A model generated the notes under the pieces. It saw only the letters and a list, made by a program, of their open reading frames with translations, was not told the origin of the DNA and did not search any database. A program made the position numbers and the translations under genes. Positions 4,702 through 50,979 of a stretch of DNA of 64,000 nt are shown one piece after another. Source of the stretch: Octopus sinensis (lineage: Eukaryota); NCBI RefSeq assembly GCF_006345805.1, contig NC_043001.1:126790001-126854000 (forward strand), written 5' to 3'. The first letter of the stretch is position 1. Every line of letters begins with the position of its first letter.

Positions 4702-4807
4702 TTACTCAGTCTTTGCAAGTCTCTCTGCTGCAAATCGGATCAGTCTTTGAGCCAGAATTGAACGTTTGATGTCGTCGCTTGATATGTCACTACGTTTTTT
4801 CTTGCCA
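4702..4807 (-). CDS. Neuropeptide precursor, last coding exon: (S)GKKKR-SDISSDDIKRSILAQRLIRFAAERLAKTE*
   Basis: Acceptor attttag|t, phase 2; amidation/cleavage signal GKKKR, second KR site, TAA at 4702-4704. Exon continues to a GTGAG donor (exon 4690-4807). Confidence 0.85.
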
Positions 4808-7089: not shown

Positions 7090-7676
7090 TTTTATTATTA
7101 TTATTTTTTATCTAGTTTCAGCTCACGAGCTGTGGCCATGCTGGGGCACCGCCATTTGGTGTTGCTATATAATTTTACTTCACGAATGCTTTTTAGCAGG
7201 AAGAGATTCAGTTTTATTTTAAAGACATCTGCATCCACCCCATGCAGGTCTCTCAGGTTCTTCGGGAGGATATTGAAGAGCTGTGGGCCTCTGAAGCCCA
7301 GGCTATCACAGTATCTTGTCCTACATCTTGATGGCAAATTTGGAGTCCTTGGCACTATGCAGTGGCGCCCAGTTCTAGCATTTGTGTAACTCTCGATGCC
7401 AAAGTTTGGGACAAGTCCTTCTAGTATCTTCCAGATGTATATTATGGCATATCTTTCTCGCCTACGCTCTAAGGAATAGAGTCTTAATCTCTTGAGTCTT
7501 TCCCAGTAGCTTATATGCTGCACAGAGGCTATCTTCTTCGTGTAGCTTCGTAGCCTCAAGTTCTGTGATTAACTTGACACTGGATGGTGACCATAGCTGA
7601 GAGCAATAGTCAAAGTGGCTTAGGATAAGTGTCCTCCAGAGGACCATCATGGTTTTCTGGTCTCTTGTTCTAAAGG

Positions 7677-10792: not shown

Positions 10793-11126
10793 TACTCTCT
10801 TTTACTCTTTTAGTTGTTTCAGCCATTTGACTGTGGCCATGCTGGAGCACCGCCTTTAGTCGAGCAAATCGACTCCAGGACTTATGCTTTGTAAGCCTAG
10901 TACTTATTCTATCGGTCTCTTTTGCCGAACCGCTAGGTTACGGGGACGTAAACACACCAGCATCAGTTGTCAAGCGATGTTGGAAGGACAAACACAGACA
11001 CACAAACGTATACACACACACACATATATATACATATATACGACGGGCTTATTTCAGTTTCCTTCTACCAAATCCACTCACAAGGGTTTGGTCGGCCCGA
11101 GGCTACAGTAGAAGACACTTGCCAGG
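10793..11126 (-). mobile_element. tRNA-derived SINE family 2, 5'-truncated
   Basis: (tactctt)n tail, ggccatgctggagcaccgcc, taagcctagtacttattctatcgg, internal CA microsatellite. Confidence 0.85.
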
Positions 11127-12377: not shown

Positions 12378-12780
12378 GACATAGCTGTGTTGTAAGAAGC
12401 TTGCTTACCAACCACATGGTTCCGGGTTCAGGCCAGTGCGTGGCACCTTGGGCAAGTGTCTTCTAATATAACCTCGGGCCACTCGAAGCCCTGTGAGTGG
12501 ATTTAGTAGAGGGAAACTGAAAGAAGCCTGTCGTGTGTATATATGTATGTGTGTGTATGTGCGTGTGTGCGACTTTGTGTCTGTGTTTCCCTACCCCATT
12601 CCATGACAACCGGTGTTTACGTCCCCGTTATCTAGCGGTTCGGCAAAACAGTCCGATAGAATAAGTACTAGGCTTAAAAAGCAAGCCCTGGGGTCGATTT
12701 ATCCGATTAAAATCCTGCAAGGTGGTACTCCAGTATGGCTGCAGTCAAATGACTGAAACTAATAAAAGAATAAAAGAATA
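12378..12780 (+). mobile_element. SINE family 2, near full length
   Basis: Head gctgtg..taagaagcttgctt..ggttccgggttca; tail (aataaaag)n. Confidence 0.85.
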
Positions 12781-17160: not shown

Positions 17161-17695
17161 AGTACGACTATGAGTGTAGCGCTGATGACAGAGAAAATTT
17201 CGAATACCTACATTGCATCTACGTCTAGTTGGCCATGGCCAACCACTCTGCTCATGGCGAGAAGAGCTTTTAATTCGGCTATCCTCTGGTCGGAGGATGT
17301 CCGTTTAACGCTGAAGTAAAATCAGAAATTTCATTTAAGAATGACTCCAAAGAAATACACACTGACGAACCTCGCAGAAACAGACTCAGTCCCTCTCTCT
17401 CTCACACATACACACACACACACACAAACGCACACGCACACGCACACACATACACGCAATCACAGATACACACGCATGTGTATGTATATACATATATACA
17501 ATATATTTAATATTAAACCTATATAACAATACATATGTAATATGTGTTATTACATATTATATATATATATATGTATACACACGCACACACATATGCACAC
17601 ATTTACATCCATTCACGCTCATACACAGGAACACGCATACATACATACATACACACACAAACACACACAAACACACACACACACACATATATATA

Positions 17696-20231: not shown

Positions 20232-20282
<51 letters not shown>

Positions 20283-20390
20283 TATAGACACATATATATA
20301 TATATATATAAAACTATAGACACATATATATATATATTTATAGAACTATAGACACACACACATATATATAAGTATATATATATATGTTAT

Positions 20391-20474
<84 letters not shown>

Positions 20475-20476
20475 AT

Positions 20477-20574
<98 letters not shown>

Positions 20575-20700
20575 TATACATATATATATACATATATATA
20601 TGTATGTATATGTATGTGTTTGTGTGTATAGGTAGATAGATTAGCAATTACGAGCTGATAATATTTTAAAATCCACACACACACACACACACACACACAG
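20135..20700. repeat. Compound (AT)n block with higher-order units (aaactatagacacatat.. x3; gttatattgtata..tgaatatac x2)
   Basis: Seen directly. Confidence 0.9.
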
Positions 20701-21611: not shown

Positions 21612-21878
21612 ATAAAACCACTATTAGGCAGATCAAACAGTGAAAAACATAAACCAATAAATAGAAATAAATAAATTAATTAATATAATATACAAAATAT
21701 ACAAAATACAAAATTCTAAATTTAAATTATTTAAATTTAAAGTTAAAATTTTTAAAAATATTTAAATTATTAATTTATACTTATAATTTTTATATATATA
21801 TATTTTATTATTTTATTTTATTATTATTTTTGGGGGTTTATGTTTTTCACTGTTTGATTTGCCTAATAGTGGTTTTAT
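21612..21878. repeat. Foldback with 44-bp arms and an extremely AT-rich spacer
   Basis: 21612-21655 versus reverse complement of 21835-21878: one mismatch in 44. Confidence 0.8.
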
Positions 21879-22530: not shown

Positions 22531-22741
22531 CAGCAACACATTATAGATAGACAAGACTATCAAATGTTGTACACCGTTGATCACAGTGCGCTTTCTCGTT
22601 GTTTTAGCTCCCGAATGATGCCACCACAGTGCTTATGCGGGCAGACCTATATTACTCTTAAATGGAACCCTGGTTTGTAGCAGGGGCCCCCATTTTCAGT
22701 TGGGTGGATTGTAATACATACCTTCATACGTACCTACATAC

Positions 22742-22817
<76 letters not shown>

Positions 22818-23006
22818 CATAAATACATGCCTATATACATATGTACAAACACGCAAACAACATTTATCAATCAAAAAGTTGAGAAGGGACAGCAATGTTA
22901 CTGGAGGGTAGAACATAAAACTTTGCGTCTTTTCTTTTCCTGAAAATGGATTTTTCATGGCTTAGCAGGATTTTGGCTTTTACTGTTTTTTTGTATTTTA
23001 CTGTAC

Positions 23007-23126
23007 CTGGCGTGTACATCGACTACCCCACAGGCAACCTCGACACAACCCGGTGGTACAATGCCACCAAGTGCTAACCATGCTTGGTATTCAGCTGTTT
23101 TAATATCGCCTGTCTGGCGCTTCGAT
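23007..23126 (-). CDS. Neuropeptide precursor, peptide exon B: (R)SKR-QTGDIKTAEYQAWLALGGIVPPGCVEVACGVVDVHA(S)
   Basis: Acceptor ttttacctgtttacag|, donor AG|GTACAG; 120 nt, phase 2/2, lies inside track ORF 22955..23203. Same motif layout as exon A. Confidence 0.88.
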
Positions 23127-23173
23127 CTGTAAACAGGTAAAACAACACACAAATGGACATCAACAATAATGAC

Positions 23174-23287
23174 AGAACAATTTGACACGTCGATAAGAAA
23201 CAAACGTTATAAATACGAGAAGGAATGCGAAGAACAATTTGACACGTCGATAAGAAACAAACGTTATAAATACGAGAAGGAATGCGA
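23174..23287. repeat. Exact 57-bp tandem duplication
   Basis: 23174-23230 equals 23231-23287. Confidence 0.95.
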
Positions 23288-24063
23288 AGGAAAATTGCAC
23301 ATATCAACGTAAAAGGTAATGACAACAAAATAAAATCAATACTGCTTTTTGTAATAACATAACAATTATGATGTGACCAACTATGTGAAATGTGGGGAAC
23401 GGGTATCATTGGATAAAGATAACTATAGAAGAAGCAATGGAGTTTTACTGGAAATGGAGGTGGTTGGTAGGGTAACACGATATTCCTTTAACAAATGGTC
23501 AAAATATTTACTTAAATATTACTATATACATGTGTGTATGTGTGCGTAAAATGGCCATATATATATACTTATACATTAATATCTGTGTATATGCATATAC
23601 TATTTATATGCATTAAATGATCTATGGAAATTGAACTCCGAGTCTGCTATAATGTGTATAGCCGTGTTAACTACGACACAAGAGTGATAAATTATTTAGC
23701 TACCTAAATCAGAAGTTTAACCAAGCCATATTAGCAGCTTATGAAGTGTGAACCTCAGTCCACACAGTATGAAGGTAGAGTACTATATATAATATACATA
23801 TATAAGCGTGTGTGTGTTTCTGTGTGTGTGTGGGCAATATTTATGAATGAAATGGTACAAAAATTTGAACTGTAAAAATTGAATCTATCATTGCTACGTT
23901 ATTAATTATTGGTATAACACAAAACCCGAAAATAAATATTAACAATGTAATGCATTGACCATTTACTTAAGGATTTGAGGCGGGTAAGTCAGAAAGGGCT
24001 TTGGTTTAGGTCTTGACTAGGTAAAAGGATAGTGTTTGGGGGTTGAACTAGAGCTTACTATAC

Positions 24064-24177
24064 CTCTTTTCAATATCAACTAACCCACACGCTACCTGGG
24101 TGCAGGTAATGTTTCTGGACAATGCCATCAGTGCCCGATACTCAGCCGCTCGCATATCAGCTAGCTGTCGTTTAAAT
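24064..24177 (-). CDS. Neuropeptide precursor, peptide exon A: (R)FKR-QLADMRAAEYRALMALSRNITCTQVACGLVDIEK(S); PTH-like/PXXXamide-like
   Basis: Acceptor ctgcttacag|, donor AG|GTATAG; 114 nt, phase 2/2, open frame. KR cleavage site, N-terminal Gln, C-x4-C motif. Clear homology to exon B. Confidence 0.88.
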
Positions 24178-29532: not shown

Positions 29533-29589
29533 TTTAAATTTCTTTGCTTACAAATATCTTATTTACGAATTATTATTTTGTTTTTATCA

Positions 29590-30877
29590 CAGGTTTGTTG
29601 AAGCGCCCCCTGAAGTCTTGCATGCATAGCGGGCTTGCTACCTACAGCGTACGGGACCATGCTATTCGTTCTTTCCAGGTATCTAATACTTTCCTGATTA
29701 TTCTGGCCGTGCCAAGCAGGCAAACCTTTTGTAACAGTTCCACTGGGCACTCTATTCCAATTTCCTTTATATTCCTCTTGATGCCTTCTGATACTGTTCC
29801 CAAGGATCCAACAATAATTTGCATTATCTGCACCTTCTTCCGTTTCCACAGCCGGGTTAAGAGGGTTGTATTTATCTAACTTTTCGCTTTCCTTCTGGAC
29901 TATTCGGGGAACAAAGGGGCATGCAACTTCAACTATATAGAATATGTGGTACATGTCGTCCACCACCACTAGGTCCGGTCTGTTCTGCTCTAGCCCCTGA
30001 TCTGTTTGGATTGGGAAATACCAAGGGATTTTGCTAGTCTCCAGTTCCACTACTCTGTACAGTTTGTGTCCATATCAAGTCTTGCCTCTCTCTAGCCCCC
30101 ACTTTTCACACTTTCGCTACCTGATTGTGTCGTCACCCCTTGTAGTGGTTTTGGAAAGTCTAGGGCATTCGATCGTGATATGGTCAATGGTTTCATCCAC
30201 TCTATTGCAGATGCAGCACAGCGGTTTGACCCTCCAGTTCGTGACCAGATCGTGGTTTTGAGCTACCGCTATAGTACTCTCGGTCTCTTTTTTTAGGGTT
30301 CCTTTCATCAGCGAATCCTACCTATTTTTTCCAGCAACTTCTCTAGTAGCTACATATAATTGATTGTGTAGTCCCCTGCGTAATTCTTCTTCATATCCTT
30401 TTTCCCCTTCATCCTTTGTTTTCCATTTTTACTCTGCTCTCAATAATCCCTCGTTCCAATCTATCACTAAAAAGGTTTCCTCACTTTGGGCTAGGCATCT
30501 CATTAAGCTCTCGAGTTCGATACGCACGCAGTCTTCCATACTCACCGGTCCCCTTCCTCCATTTGCTCTTTTCATGTATAGGCAATCAGTGTCTGCACGT
30601 GGATGATGGGCTCCATGCATCGTTAGGAGCTTTCTTGACTTTCAATCCATCTCCTTTAGCTCCTCTGTCCACTTCGGGATTCCAGCACCATAGCGAACTA
30701 CTATGACTGTTCGTGAGTTTATTGCCGAAATGCTTCTAGCATTCAGCTTTGAAGTCAATATTTTTCTCATTTGCCGCAAGTACTCTCCTTTTGTCTTTTC
30801 CTTTATGATGTGGTGTTTGATTCTATCTGCCTCAAGTATTGCCAGGTTGAATTGCCTTCATTATTTCACCTCGAGTT
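29590..30877 (-). mobile_element. R4/Dong-like non-LTR retrotransposon (RLE endonuclease), 5'-truncated, copy 1
   Basis: LYMKRANGGRG, CCIC..ETIDHITIECP zinc knuckle, RPDLVVVD..YIVEVACPF (PD..D/ExK type), LLQKVCLLGTARIIRKVL; disrupted frames. Confidence 0.8.
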
Positions 30878-30897
30878 TATTATTATTATTATTATTG

Positions 30898-30957
<60 letters not shown>
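30878..30957. repeat. (ATT)n microsatellite
   Basis: Seen directly; a second tract lies at 32969-33015. Confidence 0.95.
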
Positions 30958-30959
<2 letters not shown>

Positions 30960-32967
30960 TTTGTACAGATTCTAACGCTGGAAATGTACTACCGTGTCAG
31001 CTGTTCGCTACCAGTGTACTAAGGTAATTCCCCTTATTTTTCGAGCACCTTCCGGAGTTTTCGAGCGGTTCCAAGCAGTGCTGTTTTCTGCAAGTGTTCT
31101 AACCTTATTGTAGCCCTATCTGTTCCATGTATTTGATTTTTTTTACACACTGTTCCCAGGGCTCCGACAATTATTGGTACCACTACCACCTTTTTCATTA
31201 ATCACAATTTCTTTACCTCCCAAGCTAACCTATCATATCTATCGACTTTTCTTTCTTTGGCTAATCGTTGAGAGGACGCTGGTGTTGCCTTGGCCTAGGT
31301 TTGTGCTCTAGTATGTATATATATTTTTTATTACGAATGCAAAACAACACCACAGAGGAATCGACGTAAGCTTGAATAATAAACCGCGATAGGTGAATCG
31401 CGATATGGTGAGGGATTACTGTATTTAAATTATCGCATACCTTCTTGTCAGCTGGGTATGCTATATCTATGATCCAGCATAGTTTGGTTTCTTTCTCTAT
31501 TAAGACTATGTCTGACTTCCTATTCTCTGTCTTATGGTCACACTGAATCATAAAATCCCACGGGATCTTTGCATTATCATTTTCGATTATGCCTTCGGTG
31601 TTGTGGTCGTACCAATTATTTCTCTGTGAAGTCCATACTTGTTGCAAAGTTTGCAATGGACAAGCCTTGCTATATTGTCGTGGCGTCTCTTATATTCCTT
31701 CAGGGTTAGTGGCATACATTGGCTGGTAATATGCCATACGGTTTCACCGTTTTGTCTACAAATTCTGCATTTATCACTTTCTGATGTGTTGTTTACTCTG
31801 TATTTTATGTAGTTTATTCTTTGTGCTTGCTCTTGGACAGCACAGATTAGAGCCTCCGTTTTAAATCATTATATGTCATCCACAGCCATCATTTTTCTCT
31901 GTCTGTCTTATCTTTAACATCCCTATAAAATTGTCCATGCATTCTTTTCTTTACCAATCTATTTTCAGTTTCAATCGTTTTCAATTGATTGTACAATGCT
32001 TTATCTTTGCAATCTTTCATCCTACACAAGGCTGACCTTCTTACTTCTCATAATAGCGTTTCTGTGGCATTTTTTTACATACCATTCTATGTTGTTTTCT
32101 TCTGTTGTAATGCTGTGTTCGCATCCAATAAGTCCTCTTCCCCCTCTTTTTCTTGGTACATACAGTCTGCCTGTGTCACTTTTTGGGTAGAGTGTCCCAT
32201 ATCTAGTTAGCAACTTCCTTGTCTTTCTGTCTAAGCTGCTTAGTTCGTCTACTGTTCATGCGATCACCCATGCTCCATATCTAAGGAGTGAAACTGCCCA
32301 GGTGTTGACAGCTTCAATCTTATTCTGTCCATTAAATTTCAACTTAAGGATCAGTCTCAGTCTGCGCAAGTACTCCACTTGAAATTTTTCTGTCGTTTCT
32401 TTCTCCATCAATTCATCCATTTCCAAAATTCCCAAGTACTTATAGCCCGTCTCTTCTATCTGCTCCATAACCTCCCCCGACGGTATCGATAGCCCGTCCA
32501 TACATTTGATTTTGCCACTCTTCAAGACTAACACACCACACTTTCTCAGTCCGAACTCCATTTTGATATCAGCACTGAAAATATACATCGTATCGACGAG
32601 GGAATTGACTTGGTTTTCATCTTTACCATAAAGTTTGAGATCATCTATGAATAACAAATGGTTGCCTTTTTGTTGGCGGCTTTTGAATACATACCCAGCT
32701 TTTGCTTTCCTCAGCATCAGTGTTAGTGGTATCAAGCACAGTACAAAGATCAGTGAGAATGGGCAGCACCCCCTGGAAGATGCCCCTCCTGATTTCTACT
32801 GTCCCTAAACTTCTTCCGTATGCTCTTAAGGCCGTCCTCCAATTCGCCATACTTTTTCCAAGCAATCGCTCAAAATTCCATTATCCAAGAGATCATATCG
32901 TACGCCTTACGATAGTCGGTCCATGACATGGCTAAGTTACTTTTCCTCCTCTTGAAGTCTCTAAGTA

Positions 32968-33331: not shown

Positions 33332-33420
33332 CTCAATTCTTCCTCTGGGATATATCGTGCATTTACAAGAGAAACTAGCACCATGCCAACAATGCTAAGT
33401 ATTAAAATGTGTCGTGTCAT
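33332..33420 (-). CDS. Neuropeptide precursor, first coding exon (signal peptide): MTRHILILSIVGMVLVSLVNA/RYIPEEEL(R)
   Basis: Acceptor ttgattttag|ATG and donor AG|GTAAG; 89 nt, ends in phase 2. Basic n-region, hydrophobic h-region and V-N-A cleavage motif. In frame with the downstream exons. Confidence 0.85.
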
Positions 33421-34882
33421 CTAAAATCAAATGAGAGAAGACATAAATGATGTGAAATGGATATGAAATTCCAGCACGCAAAGCGTCAATTATGCGATTA
33501 TTAACAAACATGAAAAACATTAAACCGTGCAAAAAGTAATTTCTTAATATTCACCGTTCTTCTTTCCAAGGATTCTATTCACGTTACCTGTATTTAACCC
33601 TGGAAGAAATTCCGGTAAATATTCGATATATTTCAGCCATCAAAATGAAACCAGCGGATACCTTATCACAATAATCAGTGTTGACATATAGCAAGTAGAA
33701 ATTACTTAATTCTCTTTACATTAGATTTGGCCTCAGAGAAATGCCTCTGTCAAATGGAAACATAATCTGAAATCACTTGCCTATTCTCAAGAACAATTCC
33801 CCAAACGAGTTACTTATTGCCTTTTCCTGTTGCCTGGATTAACATTTTTGTTTGGATATCAACAGAACATGGGCTCTTTGATTCGGCAAAAGTACTAAAG
33901 TCTACTGAGGTCAACAATGTAGAAGTCGTTATTGTTGTTTAGTCCCAGAAGATCCGTGATTGAACTGGCCTACGATCATTCCAGCAGCGATATAGAGTTG
34001 CTACATCTAGTAAAACTGTCGAGCACGTAGACGTTCCGTTTGTTGGCTCAAATTATACATGAGTCGGAGCAATGGAAGAATATTGTTGAACGATGCAAAA
34101 GCACTAAAATACTGACGGATTTATCTTTGATCTTACACATTCTAGATATTGTCATATGAAACTGGCAGGAGACAGGGTCATCTTAGGCAGAACAAATAAG
34201 TGTAACATTCGTTCGAATGATTATAACCACGTATCAACGTACGCTTGAAGTCACACGTGAAGTTTCCGTAAATATTTGTATGTGTGCGTGTACGGTGTGT
34301 ATGTGAGTGTATGTATGTATGCATGTATGTATGTATGTATGTATGTGCAGATCTGTATTATGTATGTATTCTCATGCATATAGTTCCATATCTAGACATG
34401 CTTATATATATTTAAATGATAAACTTCTGGAAAGTTTTACAGATTTTTACAGTTCCAGTGATGGATTAGATCTGTAGCCTTTGAATAAGCTTTCTCCTTC
34501 CAGGGGTGCACGTGTATGTGTGTATGTGTGATTATAGTAAAGCGTACCCGTTCCATTCTTTTTATATCTATCCTATTTACGGAATGAGAGTGAATACTCG
34601 AAACTTAAATAGTACATTTTCCCATTTCCTGAGCAGCAAGCTATACTAACTTTGCGTCAATTTTTATCTTGTCTCCATGTTGAATTTTTTATAACCTTCT
34701 GTGGGTAGACACACAAACACACACATATATATAATATATAACATATATATAGAGAGAGGGACAGAGAGAGAGAGAGAGAGAGAGAGAAATACATATAGAT
34801 ATATGCATGTATATATGATATATACGTAAATGTAACATTGGACATTATATATATATATATATACATACATACATACACACAG

Positions 34883-48809: not shown

Positions 48810-49094
48810 ATTATGAATAGCCACAAAAATAATATCTGAGCTAAAAAAATAATAATAACTAGAGAATAAACACACATTCATATAGAAATACATACACATA
48901 TATAAACATACGAACTAATACAAGGAATATGAAGATACGATCAAACATAACTATCTGTGTGATATGCCTTAAGCTCAACATTTCAACAACCGACTACACG
49001 TTTTTTACGTCATCACTTCTCTGCCTCTCGTTCCTATCTACTTCTTTATTACAGCCTCTACAATTTTTTACTCTCAATCCCCCTCTCTCTCAAT

Positions 49095-49096
<2 letters not shown>

Positions 49097-49156
<60 letters not shown>

Positions 49157-49169
49157 GTCTGCCTGTCTG

Positions 49170-49244
<75 letters not shown>

Positions 49245-49265
49245 GTCTGTCTGTCTGTCTGCCTG

Positions 49266-49360
<95 letters not shown>

Positions 49361-49373
49361 GTCTGCCTGTCTG

Positions 49374-49417
<44 letters not shown>

Positions 49418-49558
49418 AAATTCTCCCACTCTCACACGATATATATGTATGTGAGTGTGAGTGTGTATGTGTGCGTGTGTGCGTGTGCAGGTGTGCGTGT
49501 GTACACACATACAAATATGCATTAATACACATACATACATACACACAAATATAATATA

Positions 49559-49591
<33 letters not shown>

Positions 49592-49875
49592 TGTATGTAC
49601 GTACGTACGTATGTATGTATGTATGTATGTATGTATGTATGTACGTACGTACGTATGTATGTATGTATGTATGTATGTATGTATGTACGTACGTATGTAT
49701 GTATGTATGTATGCATGCATGTACGTACGTACGTATGTATGTATGTATGTATGCATGTATGTGTGTGTGTATGTATGTACGTACGTATGTATGTATGTAT
49801 GTATGTATGCATGTATGTATGTATGTATGTATGTATGTATGTATGTATGTATGTATGTATGTGCGTGTGTATGTA
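49097..49875. repeat. (TCTA/TCTG)n followed by (ATGT/ACGT)n tetranucleotide arrays
   Basis: Seen directly. Confidence 0.95.
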
Positions 49876-50334
49876 TTCATTCATTCCTTCCATTTATGGA
49901 GTATTTCTTAACGTCTTTTGTCATTTAAATTTCAAAAAGCATTCTGTCATTTCGTCTTTGTTTCAAAAAGATACCTCATGTTGATTTTTGGTCTTAGAAA
50001 TAAAAGAAATCATTAAAGACTACCATTAGATCAAACTTATTGTTATTCTTGCTGGTGTCGCTGCTGTTGTTGTTGATGTTGTTGTTGTTGCTGCTGTTTT
50101 TTGTATATGCATTTTTTTTTTTTTTGTTTGGTCGGTTTTACAGTTCAAGTTGCAATTTTCGATTTGTTGTGTATTCTTGATTGATTTTGCGTGTTTATTT
50201 TGTCTTTCTCTTTGATTCTTTATGATTTTTTTTTTCTTTCTGTGAATGAATTTTTCACTGTTAGCTTTAGCTTAATTGATTCTATTAACGAGATTTCTGT
50301 TAAACTTCATTGTGTGGTTTTTCTTTACAGTTAG

Positions 50335-50338
50335 TTCT

Positions 50339-50386
<48 letters not shown>

Positions 50387-50400
50387 CTTCTTTCTTTTCT

Positions 50401-50435
<35 letters not shown>

Positions 50436-50460
50436 TTCCTCTTCTTTCTTTTCTTCTTCT

Positions 50461-50495
<35 letters not shown>

Positions 50496-50539
50496 TTCCT
50501 CTTCTTTCTTTTCTTCTTCTATTTCTGCTGCTGCTGCTG

Positions 50540-50594
<55 letters not shown>

Positions 50595-50604
50595 CACCAC
50601 CACC

Positions 50605-50653
<49 letters not shown>

Positions 50654-50655
50654 AT
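50335..50655. repeat. Compound triplet array (CTT)n-(CTG)-(CTA)n-(CCA)n-(CTA)n
   Basis: Seen directly. Confidence 0.95.
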
Positions 50656-50979
50656 ACTAATACTTTTACTCTTTTTACTTTTTAATCATAATAAGTAGGA
50701 GTCATAATGAGTAGGAGGATGCACATGTTTACATTTTAGAGAGATCTATATAAGTAAGATATGTGTGTTTGTGCGCGCTCGCGCGCGCGCGTGTGTGTGT
50801 GTGTGTATTTTCTATCGAAGTTCACATGAGATGTGGGCTTTATTCCGTCTAATTATTACCTGTCATTTTATAAAATGAAAGACATTCTTGCTCTGTTAGC
50901 ACCTGTTAAATCTGATGCTAATGCGGACTAGCGAAATTTGAACTAGAATTGACATTGAACGAAAATCACAGAGGTGATA

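What the first reader, a model, noticed from the sequence alone, without database searches (positions are those of the whole stretch)
23007..24177. Splice choice could act as an amidation switch; every exon combination stays in frame
Both exons are multiples of 3 and the 937-bp intron between them is too long for steric exclusion. A+B inclusion is therefore in frame (142 aa) and the junction creates ..VDIE-K-R-SKR, so peptide A would be cut to a shorter free acid while only B is amidated. A alone gives A-amide. Skipping both gives RYIPEEELS-amide. Peptide A also carries an N-I-T sequon just before the Cys loop that B lacks (PPG turn instead). This could be mutually exclusive splicing or a combinatorial code with up to four products.
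Basis: partly seen in the sequence, partly recalled or inferred. Interest (0 to 1): 0.75.

Follow-up and report, generated by a model that had tools for sequence, protein, structure and literature searches.

The report
Octopus QSamide/PTH-like neuropeptide gene cassettes
The two exons are real alternative peptide cassettes of the octopus version of a known mollusc neuropeptide gene (QSamide/PXXXamide, the invertebrate parathyroid-hormone-like family), and which exons are spliced in decides which peptide gets its C-terminal amide, a rule already documented by mass spectrometry in the oyster gene of the same family.

Summary
On the minus strand, exon A (24177-24064, 114 nt) and exon B (23126-23007, 120 nt) are phase-1 cassettes with AG/GT sites, 937 nt apart.

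The window matches Octopus sinensis LOC115211866, whose only recorded protein is e1+A+C+last exon.

Profile searches and three papers place the gene in the lophotrochozoan QSamide/QSGamide plus PXXXamide (insect-PTH-like) proneuropeptide family. A and B are QSamide-type peptides with a Cys loop. C is PXXXamide/iPTH-type.

The shared last exon supplies the only Gly-Lys-Lys-Lys-Arg signal, so only the last included cassette is amidated. In the oyster gene of this family, published mass spectrometry shows one QS cassette as both ...RS-amide and as a shorter free acid, depending on the transcript.

So the amidation switch is right in principle but already known in kind. Still untested in octopus: whether A and B are mutually exclusive or combinatorial. 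I found no conserved pairing elements. The N-I-T sequon is not conserved. Exon A is absent from Argonauta. A young paralogue carries a Val-to-Gly change that would uncouple amidation from inclusion of C.

The parts
33332..33420 (-). First coding exon: signal peptide MTRHILILSIVGMVLVSLVNA plus propeptide RYIPEEEL, ending in the split codon AG-. The ATG directly follows an AG acceptor, so a 5' UTR exon probably lies upstream; I did not locate it.
   Evidence: It is 100% identical in protein to O. bimaculoides and to the paralogue.
24064..24177 (-). Cassette A, 114 nt, phase 1-1. It encodes a QSamide-type peptide: (R)FKR-QLADMRAAEYRALMALSRNITCTQVACGLVDIEK(S/R).
   Evidence: It is present in the O. 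sinensis RefSeq proteins P0003 and P0004. It was not found in Argonauta.
23127..24063 (-). The 937-nt intron between A and B, GT-AG. The last 100 nt before B are 100/100 identical to O. bimaculoides.
23174..23287 (-). Perfect tandem duplication of a 57-nt unit, 48-161 nt upstream of the exon B acceptor. It is single-copy in O. bimaculoides and in both paralogue loci.
23007..23126 (-). Cassette B, 120 nt, phase 1-1. It encodes the conserved molluscan QSamide-type peptide: (R)SKR-QTGDIKTAEYQAWLALGGIVPPGCVEVACGVVDVHA(S/R).
   Evidence: There are 0/120 nucleotide differences from O. bimaculoides. pN/pS is 0.18 against Argonauta. Gastropod and chiton relatives appear.
17212..17310 (-). It encodes a PXXXamide/iPTH-type peptide: (S)VKR-TSSDQRIAELKALLAMSRVVGHGQLDVDA(I), which becomes ...DVDAI-amide when joined to the last exon.
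   Evidence: It is part of XP_029636461.1.
4702..4807 (-). Last coding exon. Its first base completes the junction codon (Ser or Ile). It then supplies GKKKR (amidation donor plus cleavage site) and the C-terminal peptide SDISSDDIKRSILAQRLIRFAAERLAKTE followed by the stop codon.

Best explanation
The region is the middle of the Octopus sinensis QSamide/PXXXamide (invertebrate PTH-like) proneuropeptide gene, LOC115211866.

Gene layout:
- A signal-peptide exon comes first.
- Three homologous in-frame peptide cassettes follow: A and B (QSamide-type, with a C-x4-C loop) and C (PXXXamide/iPTH-type).
- One shared last exon begins x-GGC-AAA-AAG-AAA-CGA, which reads Gly-Lys-Lys-Lys-Arg.

How it works:
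- Each cassette starts with its own xKR cleavage site.
- Each cassette ends in a split codon (AG- for A and B, AT- for C).
- The cassette spliced to the last exon therefore ends ...S-G-KKKR or ...I-G-KKKR and is amidated.
- A cassette followed by another cassette ends in a basic cleavage site with no Gly, and is released as a shorter free acid.

Alternative inclusion of the cassettes thus selects both which peptides are made and which one carries the amide.

Shown here: the architecture, family membership, conservation of the cassettes, database isoforms (A+C, B+C, A, B, none) and one spliced B-only cDNA.

Shown in a relative (oyster): the transcripts and both the amide and the free-acid peptide forms.

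Inferred for octopus: regulated splicing within one animal, the actual peptide products, and signalling through a PTH-type class B receptor.
For: Architecture and junctions.

Identity of the window: an exact match of the A+C isoform to XP_029636461.1/XP_036358962.1.

Isoform models:
- O. bimaculoides B+C and a 64-aa model with no cassette.
- O. vulgaris B only.
- The O. sinensis paralogue A only.
- Argonauta B+C.
- A 1223-nt Logan contig carrying a spliced B-only ORF.
- Gastropod models that are B-only, B+C and C-only. These include Biomphalaria P0021 (named isoform X2, B-only) with the B+C protein P0019, and paired Bradybaena models.

Family placement:
- The profile search found 76 representatives.
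- One is named QSGamide [Urechis unicinctus].
- One representative (P0097, source not looked up) contains the published oyster QS3 peptide sequence.
- PMC8398477 lists the Aplysia, Lottia and Capitella relatives as QSamide/PXXXamide and describes differential splicing of the oyster gene.
- PMC8557429 equates the iPTH/PXXXamide and QSGamide precursors.
- PMC7224569 shows that PXXXamide is the ligand of the insect PTH receptor and that its amidation signal is strictly conserved.

Amide versus free acid from one cassette: the oyster MS table.

Constraint, O. sinensis against O. bimaculoides:
- A differs at 3/114 against 7.9% in its flanks.
- B differs at 0/120.
- C differs at 2/99 against 10.7% in its flanks.
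- The weak 5' splice sites of A and B are conserved.
Against: - I could not examine octopus RNA reads or peptidomics. The isoforms are database gene models of unknown evidence level plus a single cDNA contig from an unidentified cephalopod.
- Only one protein isoform was returned for this gene in each of O. sinensis and O. bimaculoides. The A/B difference could therefore be a difference between species or between annotations, rather than regulated splicing.
- The exact-sequence look-up found none of the other seven isoforms of this gene.
- C ends VDAI rather than PXXX.
- No receptor data exist for any lophotrochozoan.
Confidence: 0.75

Rival explanations
1. A and B form a strict mutually exclusive exon pair, enforced by competing RNA structures or dedicated splicing factors. 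Every mRNA then carries exactly one QSamide-type cassette, with or without C.
For: - A and B are tandem homologous exons of the same phase with similar splice flanks: CTGYTTACAG|AT and AG|GTAYAGTAA.
- The NCBI-named models from O. sinensis, O. bimaculoides and Argonauta contain A or B, never both.
- Steric exclusion and nonsense-mediated decay cannot be the mechanism, because the intron is 937 nt and all combinations are in frame. Any exclusivity would have to be an active process.
Against: - No inverted repeat outside low-complexity sequence flanks A or B and is shared with O. bimaculoides.
- Between Octopus and Argonauta, nothing beyond about 25 nt around the exons is conserved.
- Relatives carry two QS-type cassettes in one model: Lottia P0048, P0041 and Bradybaena P0016.
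- The oyster gene combines cassettes.
- The O. vulgaris paralogue model P0007 joins A+B+C, although its terminal exons look spurious.
Confidence: 0.2
2. The choice is fixed by species or gene copy rather than regulated. O. sinensis gene 1 uses A(+C) and O. bimaculoides uses B(+C), and the unused exon is on its way out.
For: Only one protein isoform was returned for each species, and they differ: A+C in O. sinensis and B+C in O. bimaculoides. Argonauta has no exon A at all.
Against: - The supposedly unused exons are intact and constrained in both species.
- B has 0/120 differences between the two species, against about 7.6% in non-coding DNA.
- A has 3/114 differences against 7.9% in its flanks.
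- The splice sites are identical in all four Octopus loci.
Confidence: 0.12
3. All three cassettes are constitutively included (A+B+C). The shorter database models are annotation artefacts, so there is no switch.
For: The O. vulgaris model P0007 joins A, B and C. A+B+C is in frame at 175 aa.
Against: - P0007 lacks the true first and last exons, which lie outside the model in L002. This is typical of an ab initio call.
- A spliced B-only cDNA exists.
- Gastropod short contigs of about 1 kb from JGI and Logan encode B-only precursors.
- Oyster transcripts and peptides prove alternative use in the family.
Confidence: 0.05

Closest known systems
Crassostrea gigas Cragi-QSamide3/PXXXamide gene (Mar Drugs 2021;19:452, PMC8398477)
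   Same: - Same family.
- A QSamide-type Cys-loop cassette and PXXXamide-type cassette(s) lie in one gene and are alternatively spliced.
- A shared 3' exon provides the Gly-basic signal.
- The N-terminal propeptide and junction are alike: RFLDQDEEARF-KR-QTADMR in oyster against RYIPEEELRF-KR-QLADMR in octopus.
- The QS cassette was found as ...VDIFRS-amide and as ...VDIF free acid.
   Different: - Octopus has two QSamide-type cassettes (A and B) plus one PXXX-type cassette. The oyster gene has one QS cassette and two PXXX-type cassettes.
- Octopus C has Val instead of the name-giving Pro.
- No octopus transcript or peptide data were available here.
Insect PTH (iPTH, formerly PXXXamide) of Tribolium castaneum and the Sepia officinalis PXXXamide (PLoS Genet 2020, PMC7224569)
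   Same: Cassette C has the same layout: dibasic site, conserved S-D near the N-terminus, about 30 residues, then a strictly conserved Gly plus basic amidation signal followed by a C-terminal extension. The precursors are regarded as orthologous to QSGamide precursors.
   Different: The Tribolium precursor described there carries a single mature peptide, and no splice isoforms are reported in that paper. Receptor pairing (PTH-type GPCR) is shown only in arthropods.
Annelid QSamide/QSGamide (Platynereis, Urechis, Capitella)
   Same: They share the Q-x-[AG]-D...C-x4-C-G-L-[VI]-D...S-GKKKR peptide and the helical C-terminal peptide. Urechis QSGamide is hit at E = 1.6e-16.
   Different: The Urechis precursor (P0055) carries a single QS-type peptide. 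Capitella P0064 has QS plus PXXX-type peptides in one model.
Ion transport peptide versus ITP-like, and CHH versus CHH-L, in arthropods (from my own knowledge, not tested here)
   Same: It works in a similar way: alternative 3' exon choice yields a C-terminally amidated hormone or a longer non-amidated one from a single gene.
   Different: It is an unrelated peptide family. There the C-terminal sequence itself is swapped, whereas here an identical cassette changes its end according to its downstream neighbour.

Membership tests
QSamide/QSGamide-PXXXamide (iPTH-like) proneuropeptide family | A secretory precursor: signal peptide, a short acidic propeptide, then a dibasic site before the peptide | tested here: met
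   The sequence reads MTRHILILSIVGMVLVSLVNA|RYIPEEEL-R-[FS]KR-Q.... Its layout aligns with 14 relatives.
QSamide/QSGamide-PXXXamide (iPTH-like) proneuropeptide family | A QSamide-type peptide: N-terminal Gln, x-[AG]-D-x-[KR]-x-A-E-Y, a C-x4-C loop followed by G-[LV]-[VI]-D, and an end of S-G-KKKR | tested here: met
   Both A and B carry every element. The profile search links them to the named Urechis QSGamide and to a protein carrying the oyster QS3 peptide.
QSamide/QSGamide-PXXXamide (iPTH-like) proneuropeptide family | A PXXXamide/iPTH-type peptide: S-D-Q-R-[IM]-A-E near the N-terminus, ...G-H-G..., Pro at position -4, and Gly plus basic residues | tested here: met
   Cassette C reads TSSDQRIAELKALLAMSRVVGHGQLDVDAI-GKKKR. 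The Pro at -4 is replaced by Val. PMC7224569 states that this Pro is only mildly conserved, whereas S-D and the amidation signal are conserved.
QSamide/QSGamide-PXXXamide (iPTH-like) proneuropeptide family | A conserved helical C-terminal peptide after GKKKR (...RYxLL[KR]xLIxRAAxE) | tested here: met
   SDISSDDIKRSILAQRLIRFAAERLAKTE aligns with gastropod relatives. The corresponding peptide of oyster QSamide1 was detected by MS.
QSamide/QSGamide-PXXXamide (iPTH-like) proneuropeptide family | Alternative splicing that yields QS-only, PXXX-only and QS+PXXX transcripts (described for the oyster gene) | tested here: inconclusive
   Database models show A+C, B+C, A, B and no cassette, and there is one B-only cDNA. 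I could not query octopus read-level data.
QSamide/QSGamide-PXXXamide (iPTH-like) proneuropeptide family | The ligand activates a PTH-type class B GPCR | not testable with these tools
   This is shown for Tribolium iPTH only and has not yet been tested in any lophotrochozoan.
CRF / DH44 / ELH family (UniProt calls the 64-aa O. bimaculoides model and the Capitella homologue 'Corticotropin-releasing factor domain-containing protein') | A match to the CRF domain profile (Pfam PF00473) and a C-terminally amidated peptide of about 40 residues | tested here: not met
   No CRF hit appeared, even at E <= 10, for 12 family members including P0008. The C-terminal peptide ends ...AKTE-stop with no Gly.
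Mutually exclusive exon cluster with docking/selector RNA pairing (Dscam/14-3-3 type) | Tandem homologous exons of equal phase | tested here: met
   A and B are 45-50% identical in protein, both are phase 1-1, and their splice flanks are similar.
Mutually exclusive exon cluster with docking/selector RNA pairing (Dscam/14-3-3 type) | Conserved complementary intronic elements that allow only one exon to be included | tested here: not met
   Only (TA)n-type and copy-specific 11-mers pair, and none is shared with O. bimaculoides. No intronic conservation extends to Argonauta. The power of this test is low, because the Octopus loci are 92-99% identical.

The most novel reading that the evidence does not exclude
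Octopods have built a three-cassette code on the ancestral QSamide/PXXXamide gene, with two QS-type cassettes and one iPTH-type cassette. Splicing then sets which peptides are released and which single one is amidated.

If amide and free-acid forms differ in potency or selectivity at PTH-type receptors, this would be a real signalling switch.

The young paralogue would be a natural experiment on that switch. Its exon C begins S-GKR instead of S-VKR, so the upstream peptide would be amidated whether or not C is included.
Probability: 0.25. Interest if true: 0.6.

Novelty: new member of a known kind. Interest (0 to 1): 0.4.

Why it matters
- **Annotation.** This assigns proteins labelled 'uncharacterized' in Octopus, Argonauta, Aplysia, Lymnaea, Biomphalaria and other molluscs to the QSamide/PXXXamide (invertebrate PTH-like) family.
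- **Conservation of the rule.** The precursor layout in which only the last included cassette meets the Gly donor recurs in chiton, gastropod, bivalve and cephalopod sequences. Splice-dependent use of it is documented only in the oyster.
- **An open question made testable.** The native ligand of lophotrochozoan PTH-type receptors is still unknown. The octopus gene offers three related peptides, each predicted in an amide form and a free-acid form, to test on those receptors.
- **A caution.** The general phenomenon is already documented in oyster, so this finding extends known biology and does not reveal a new mechanism.

Tried and rejected
- **Pfam scans.** Scans of the isoforms and 10 relatives gave no CRF hit and no other meaningful hit. 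I rejected the UniProt 'CRF domain' label.
- **Full-text searches.** Searches for peptide fragments and for LOC/XP identifiers returned nothing. A keyword search on octopus neuropeptides and mutually exclusive splicing was unhelpful.
- **Exact look-up of all eight isoforms.** Only A+C is in the protein collection, so I obtained no transcript evidence for the other forms of this gene.
- **O. vulgaris orthologue DNA.** It could not be fetched, because the gene model spans 102 kb.
- **Inverted-repeat searches for docking or selector elements.** They found only (TA)n tracts and copy-specific 11-mers.
- **Rfam.** No RNA family is present in the window.
- **Cassette phylogeny, to date exon A.** The tree is unresolved with 37 columns. 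The AU test does not reject a clade of A with cephalopod B (p = 0.47). Pairwise scores do not favour B as A's closest relative either.
- **dN/dS for exon A.** There are too few substitutions (3-5) for a meaningful ratio, so I compared exon against intron divergence instead.
- **A decaying A or B exon.** I considered and rejected this.
- **Steric or NMD enforcement of exclusivity.** I rejected this, because the intron is 937 nt and all combinations are in frame.

Full report
**1. The observation**

The gene lies on the minus strand.
- Exon A is 24177-24064 (114 nt) and exon B is 23126-23007 (120 nt).
- Both have AG acceptors and GT donors and are read in phase 1. The intron between them is 937 nt.
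- Upstream, at 33420-33332, is an exon encoding MTRHILILSIVGMVLVSLVNARYIPEEEL plus the split codon AG-.
- Downstream, at 4807-4702, is the last coding exon. It reads x-GKKKRSDISSDDIKRSILAQRLIRFAAERLAKTE-stop.

- A+B gives 142 aa with ...VDIE-K-R-SKR-QTGD.
- A alone gives ...VDIEKS-GKKKR, and B alone gives ...VDVHAS-GKKKR.
- Skipping both gives RYIPEEELS-GKKKR.
- NIT precedes the loop in A, and PPG precedes it in B.

**2.

Database relatives contain a third peptide, VKR-TSSDQRIAELKALLAMSRVVGHGQ.DVDAI. It is encoded in the window at 17310-17212. The exon is 99 nt, has the same phase, and runs from acceptor ...acttcag| to donor |gtaggt. There are therefore three symmetric cassettes and eight in-frame combinations.

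An exact-sequence look-up of all eight found only e1+A+C+last. It is identical to XP_029636461.1/XP_036358962.1, 'uncharacterized protein LOC115211866 [Octopus sinensis]'. The window is therefore O. sinensis. In its one recorded isoform, A is followed by C. A would then end ...VDIEKSV as a free acid after cleavage at KR, and C would be the amidated product.

**3. Family**

Pfam gives nothing. Word-based homology searches found unnamed homologues in these groups:
- Cephalopods: O. vulgaris, O. bimaculoides and Argonauta.
- Heterobranch gastropods: Lymnaea, Aplysia, Biomphalaria, Bradybaena, Arion, Candidula, Physella and Elysia.
- Caenogastropods: Pomacea, Babylonia and Nucella.
- Haliotis, and the chiton Liolophura.

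A profile built from 15 single-peptide precursors was run against 1.84 billion representative proteins. It found 76 members.

Looking up ten of them gave the following:
- Sources included Lottia, the scallop Mizuhopecten, Mytilus, unionid mussels and the annelid Capitella.
- One carries a name: 'QSGamide [Urechis unicinctus]'.
- Another member, P0097, contains the published oyster QS3 peptide.

The literature closes the identification.
- PMC8398477 describes the oyster QSamide and PXXXamide precursors. It lists the same Aplysia, Lottia and Capitella proteins as members. [quoted passage not shown]
- PMC8557429 states that lophotrochozoan iPTH/PXXXamide precursors are the previously published QSGamides, and that their likely receptors are the PTH-type GPCRs, which remain untested.
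- PMC7224569 shows that PXXXamide (iPTH) activates the Tribolium PTH receptor. It also shows that the Gly-basic amidation signal is strictly conserved, while the Pro at -4 is only mildly conserved.

So A and B are QSamide-type cassettes and C is the PXXXamide/iPTH-type cassette. UniProt names two relatives 'CRF domain-containing', but Pfam scans do not reproduce that label.

**4. The amidation switch**

The only amidation donor in the precursor is the Gly at the start of the last exon. A cassette joined to that exon ends S-G-KKKR (for A and B) or I-G-KKKR (for C).

A cassette joined to another cassette ends differently:
- R-SKR when followed by B.
- S-VKR when followed by C.
- R-VRR, R-IRR or R-LKR in gastropods and the chiton.

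None of these endings contains a Gly.

In the oyster this is not hypothetical. The MS table of PMC8398477 lists three relevant peptides:
- pQTADMRLSELHAIREILNRLPTGCSQYACGLVDIFRS-amide, assigned to QSamide3.
- pQTADMRLSELHAIREILNRLPTGCSQYACGLVDIF, with a free C-terminus, assigned to the QS3-like/PYKIamide transcript.
- SWSDQRM...DPYKI-amide.

**5. Are A and B both functional?**

The loci of O. bimaculoides (L001), Argonauta hians (L003) and a paralogue in O. vulgaris (L002) and O. sinensis (L005) were fetched and the exons mapped.

In all four Octopus loci, A, B and C keep their length, phase, open frame and identical splice-site flanks. The donors are sub-optimal when compared with CAGGTAAGT: A matches at 5 of 9 positions and B at 6 of 9.

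| O. sinensis against O. bimaculoides | Differences |
|---|---|
| Exon A | 3/114 (flanks 7.9%, Fisher p = 0.04) |
| Exon B | 0/120 |
| Exon C | 2/99 (flanks 10.7%, p = 0.003) |
| Non-coding, whole locus | 7.6% over 13.4 kb |

- The 100 nt upstream of B are 100/100 identical between the two species.
- Against Argonauta, B has pN/pS = 0.18.
- Neither exon is decaying. There are too few substitutions for a dN/dS estimate on A.
- The NIT sequon is KIT in O. bimaculoides and in the O. vulgaris paralogue, so glycosylation is not a conserved property.

**6. Mutually exclusive or combinatorial?**

The NCBI-named models from O. sinensis, O. bimaculoides and Argonauta contain A or B but never both:
- O. 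sinensis gene 1 is A+C.
- The O. sinensis paralogue is A only.
- O. bimaculoides and Argonauta are B+C.

The remaining evidence is mixed:
- A 64-aa O. bimaculoides model has no cassette at all (P0008).
- A 1223-nt Logan contig from another cephalopod is a spliced B-only cDNA.
- The only A+B(+C) model, O. vulgaris P0007, lacks the true first and last exons. I give it little weight.

Steric exclusion and nonsense-mediated decay cannot enforce exclusivity here.

I looked for pairing elements:
- The inverted repeats around A and B are (TA)n tracts or copy-specific 11-mers, and none is shared with O. bimaculoides.
- Between Octopus and Argonauta, only the exons plus about 25 nt on each side are conserved.

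This test has little power, because the Octopus loci are 92-99% identical and Argonauta has no exon A.

In relatives, cassettes are clearly combined. The oyster has QS3-like+PYKIamide and PYKI-like+PALIamide. Lottia, Bradybaena and another gastropod have two QS cassettes in one model. I therefore favour combinatorial cassette use and leave strict A/B exclusivity at about 0.2.

**7. Origin of exon A**

- A is not detectable in the Argonauta locus.
- A and B share their splice-flank sequences, which suggests a tandem exon duplication.
- However, A is no closer to cephalopod B (15/33 identities) than to a unionid QS cassette (19/33) or to gastropod cassettes.
- A also shares the RF-KR-Q.ADMR junction and the ACGLVDI end with oyster QS3.
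- The cassette tree is unresolved, and the AU test does not reject a clade of A with cephalopod B (p = 0.47).

The age of exon A remains open.

**8. The paralogue**

L005 (O. sinensis, an unplaced 48-kb contig, LOC118761766) and L002 (O. vulgaris) carry a complete second gene with exon 1, A, B, C and the last exon.

| Gene 1 against the paralogue (O. sinensis) | Differences |
|---|---|
| Non-coding DNA | 2.1% over 17 kb |
| Exon B | 6/120, all nonsynonymous |
| Exon C | 15/99, about 12 nonsynonymous (Fisher p about 1e-5 against flanks) |

- Four of the paralogue's exon-C residues match Argonauta, in the stretch KVAGHG.FDF, rather than gene 1.
- Possible explanations are an older duplication whose introns and 5' half have since been homogenised, or selection for divergence.
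- The paralogue's exon C begins C-GGT-AAA, which reads S-GKR, instead of C-GTT-AAA, which reads S-VKR. In that copy the upstream peptide would be amidated even when C is included.

**9. Verdict**

- The sequence observation is confirmed but incomplete.
The splice-dependent amidation logic is real and conserved, but it is an already documented property of the QSamide/PXXXamide gene family.
- The specific product list has to be revised for cassette C.
- The octopus-specific points are new details within a known kind: a second QS cassette, a possible A/B alternative, and a paralogue that would uncouple amidation from splicing.
- Read-level RNA data and peptidomics are the decisive missing evidence.

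Noticed in passing
L005 (O. sinensis VCDQ01001841.1) and L002 (O. vulgaris OX597818.1:125667544-125697974), compared with window 4702-33420: There is a complete second copy of the gene. Its non-coding DNA is only 2.1-3.5% diverged from the window gene. Exon C, however, differs at 15/99 positions, mostly nonsynonymous, and exon B at 6-7/120, all nonsynonymous. Several of the paralogue's exon-C residues match Argonauta rather than gene 1. This suggests gene conversion of the introns and the 5' half, or diversifying selection on the peptides.
   Followed up: partly
L002 18668-18766 and L005 22066-22164 (paralogue exon C), compared with window 17310-17212: The paralogue's exon C starts C-GGT-AAA (S-GKR), whereas the window's starts C-GTT-AAA (S-VKR). 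This single-base difference creates an amidation donor for the upstream cassette, so amidation in that copy would no longer depend on skipping C.
   Followed up: partly
window 23174-23287: A perfect tandem duplication of a 57-nt unit lies 48-161 nt upstream of the exon B acceptor. It is single-copy in O. bimaculoides and in both paralogue loci. Any effect on branch-point choice or on inclusion of exon B is unknown.
   Followed up: partly
window 33420-33436: The start codon directly follows an AG acceptor (...gattttag|ATG). The gene therefore probably has at least one upstream non-coding exon, which would fit the two XP accessions that share one protein. I did not locate it.
   Followed up: no
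window 29559-32735 and 7101-7559 (minus strand): Long ORF fragments lie inside the first and last introns. One has a weak Pfam reverse-transcriptase match (RVT_1, E = 0.0026, below the curated cutoff). They look like decayed retrotransposon remnants.
   Followed up: partly
window 12437-12534 and 11041-11123: Two inverted copies of a roughly 95-nt dispersed repeat are present. It has at least ten copies in the 42-kb Argonauta locus at 75-88% identity, which looks like a SINE-like element shared by octopods.
   Followed up: no
window 21622-21655 and 21845-21878: An inverted repeat of about 34 nt with nearly perfect arms, spaced about 190 nt apart, lies in the B-C intron. It is not present at the same place in the other loci and looks MITE-like.
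   Followed up: no
window 20235-20615, 22738-22847, 48929-50698: There are very long (TA)n microsatellites, one with 192 copies, and long arrays of short repeats near 49-50.7 kb. These arrays create spurious ORFs of 130-200 aa.
   Followed up: no
P0008 (O. bimaculoides, 64 aa) and P0064 (Capitella): UniProt names these family members 'Corticotropin-releasing factor domain-containing protein'. Pfam scans here give no CRF hit. The label probably rests on a weak signature match to the helical C-terminal peptide encoded by the last exon.
   Followed up: yes
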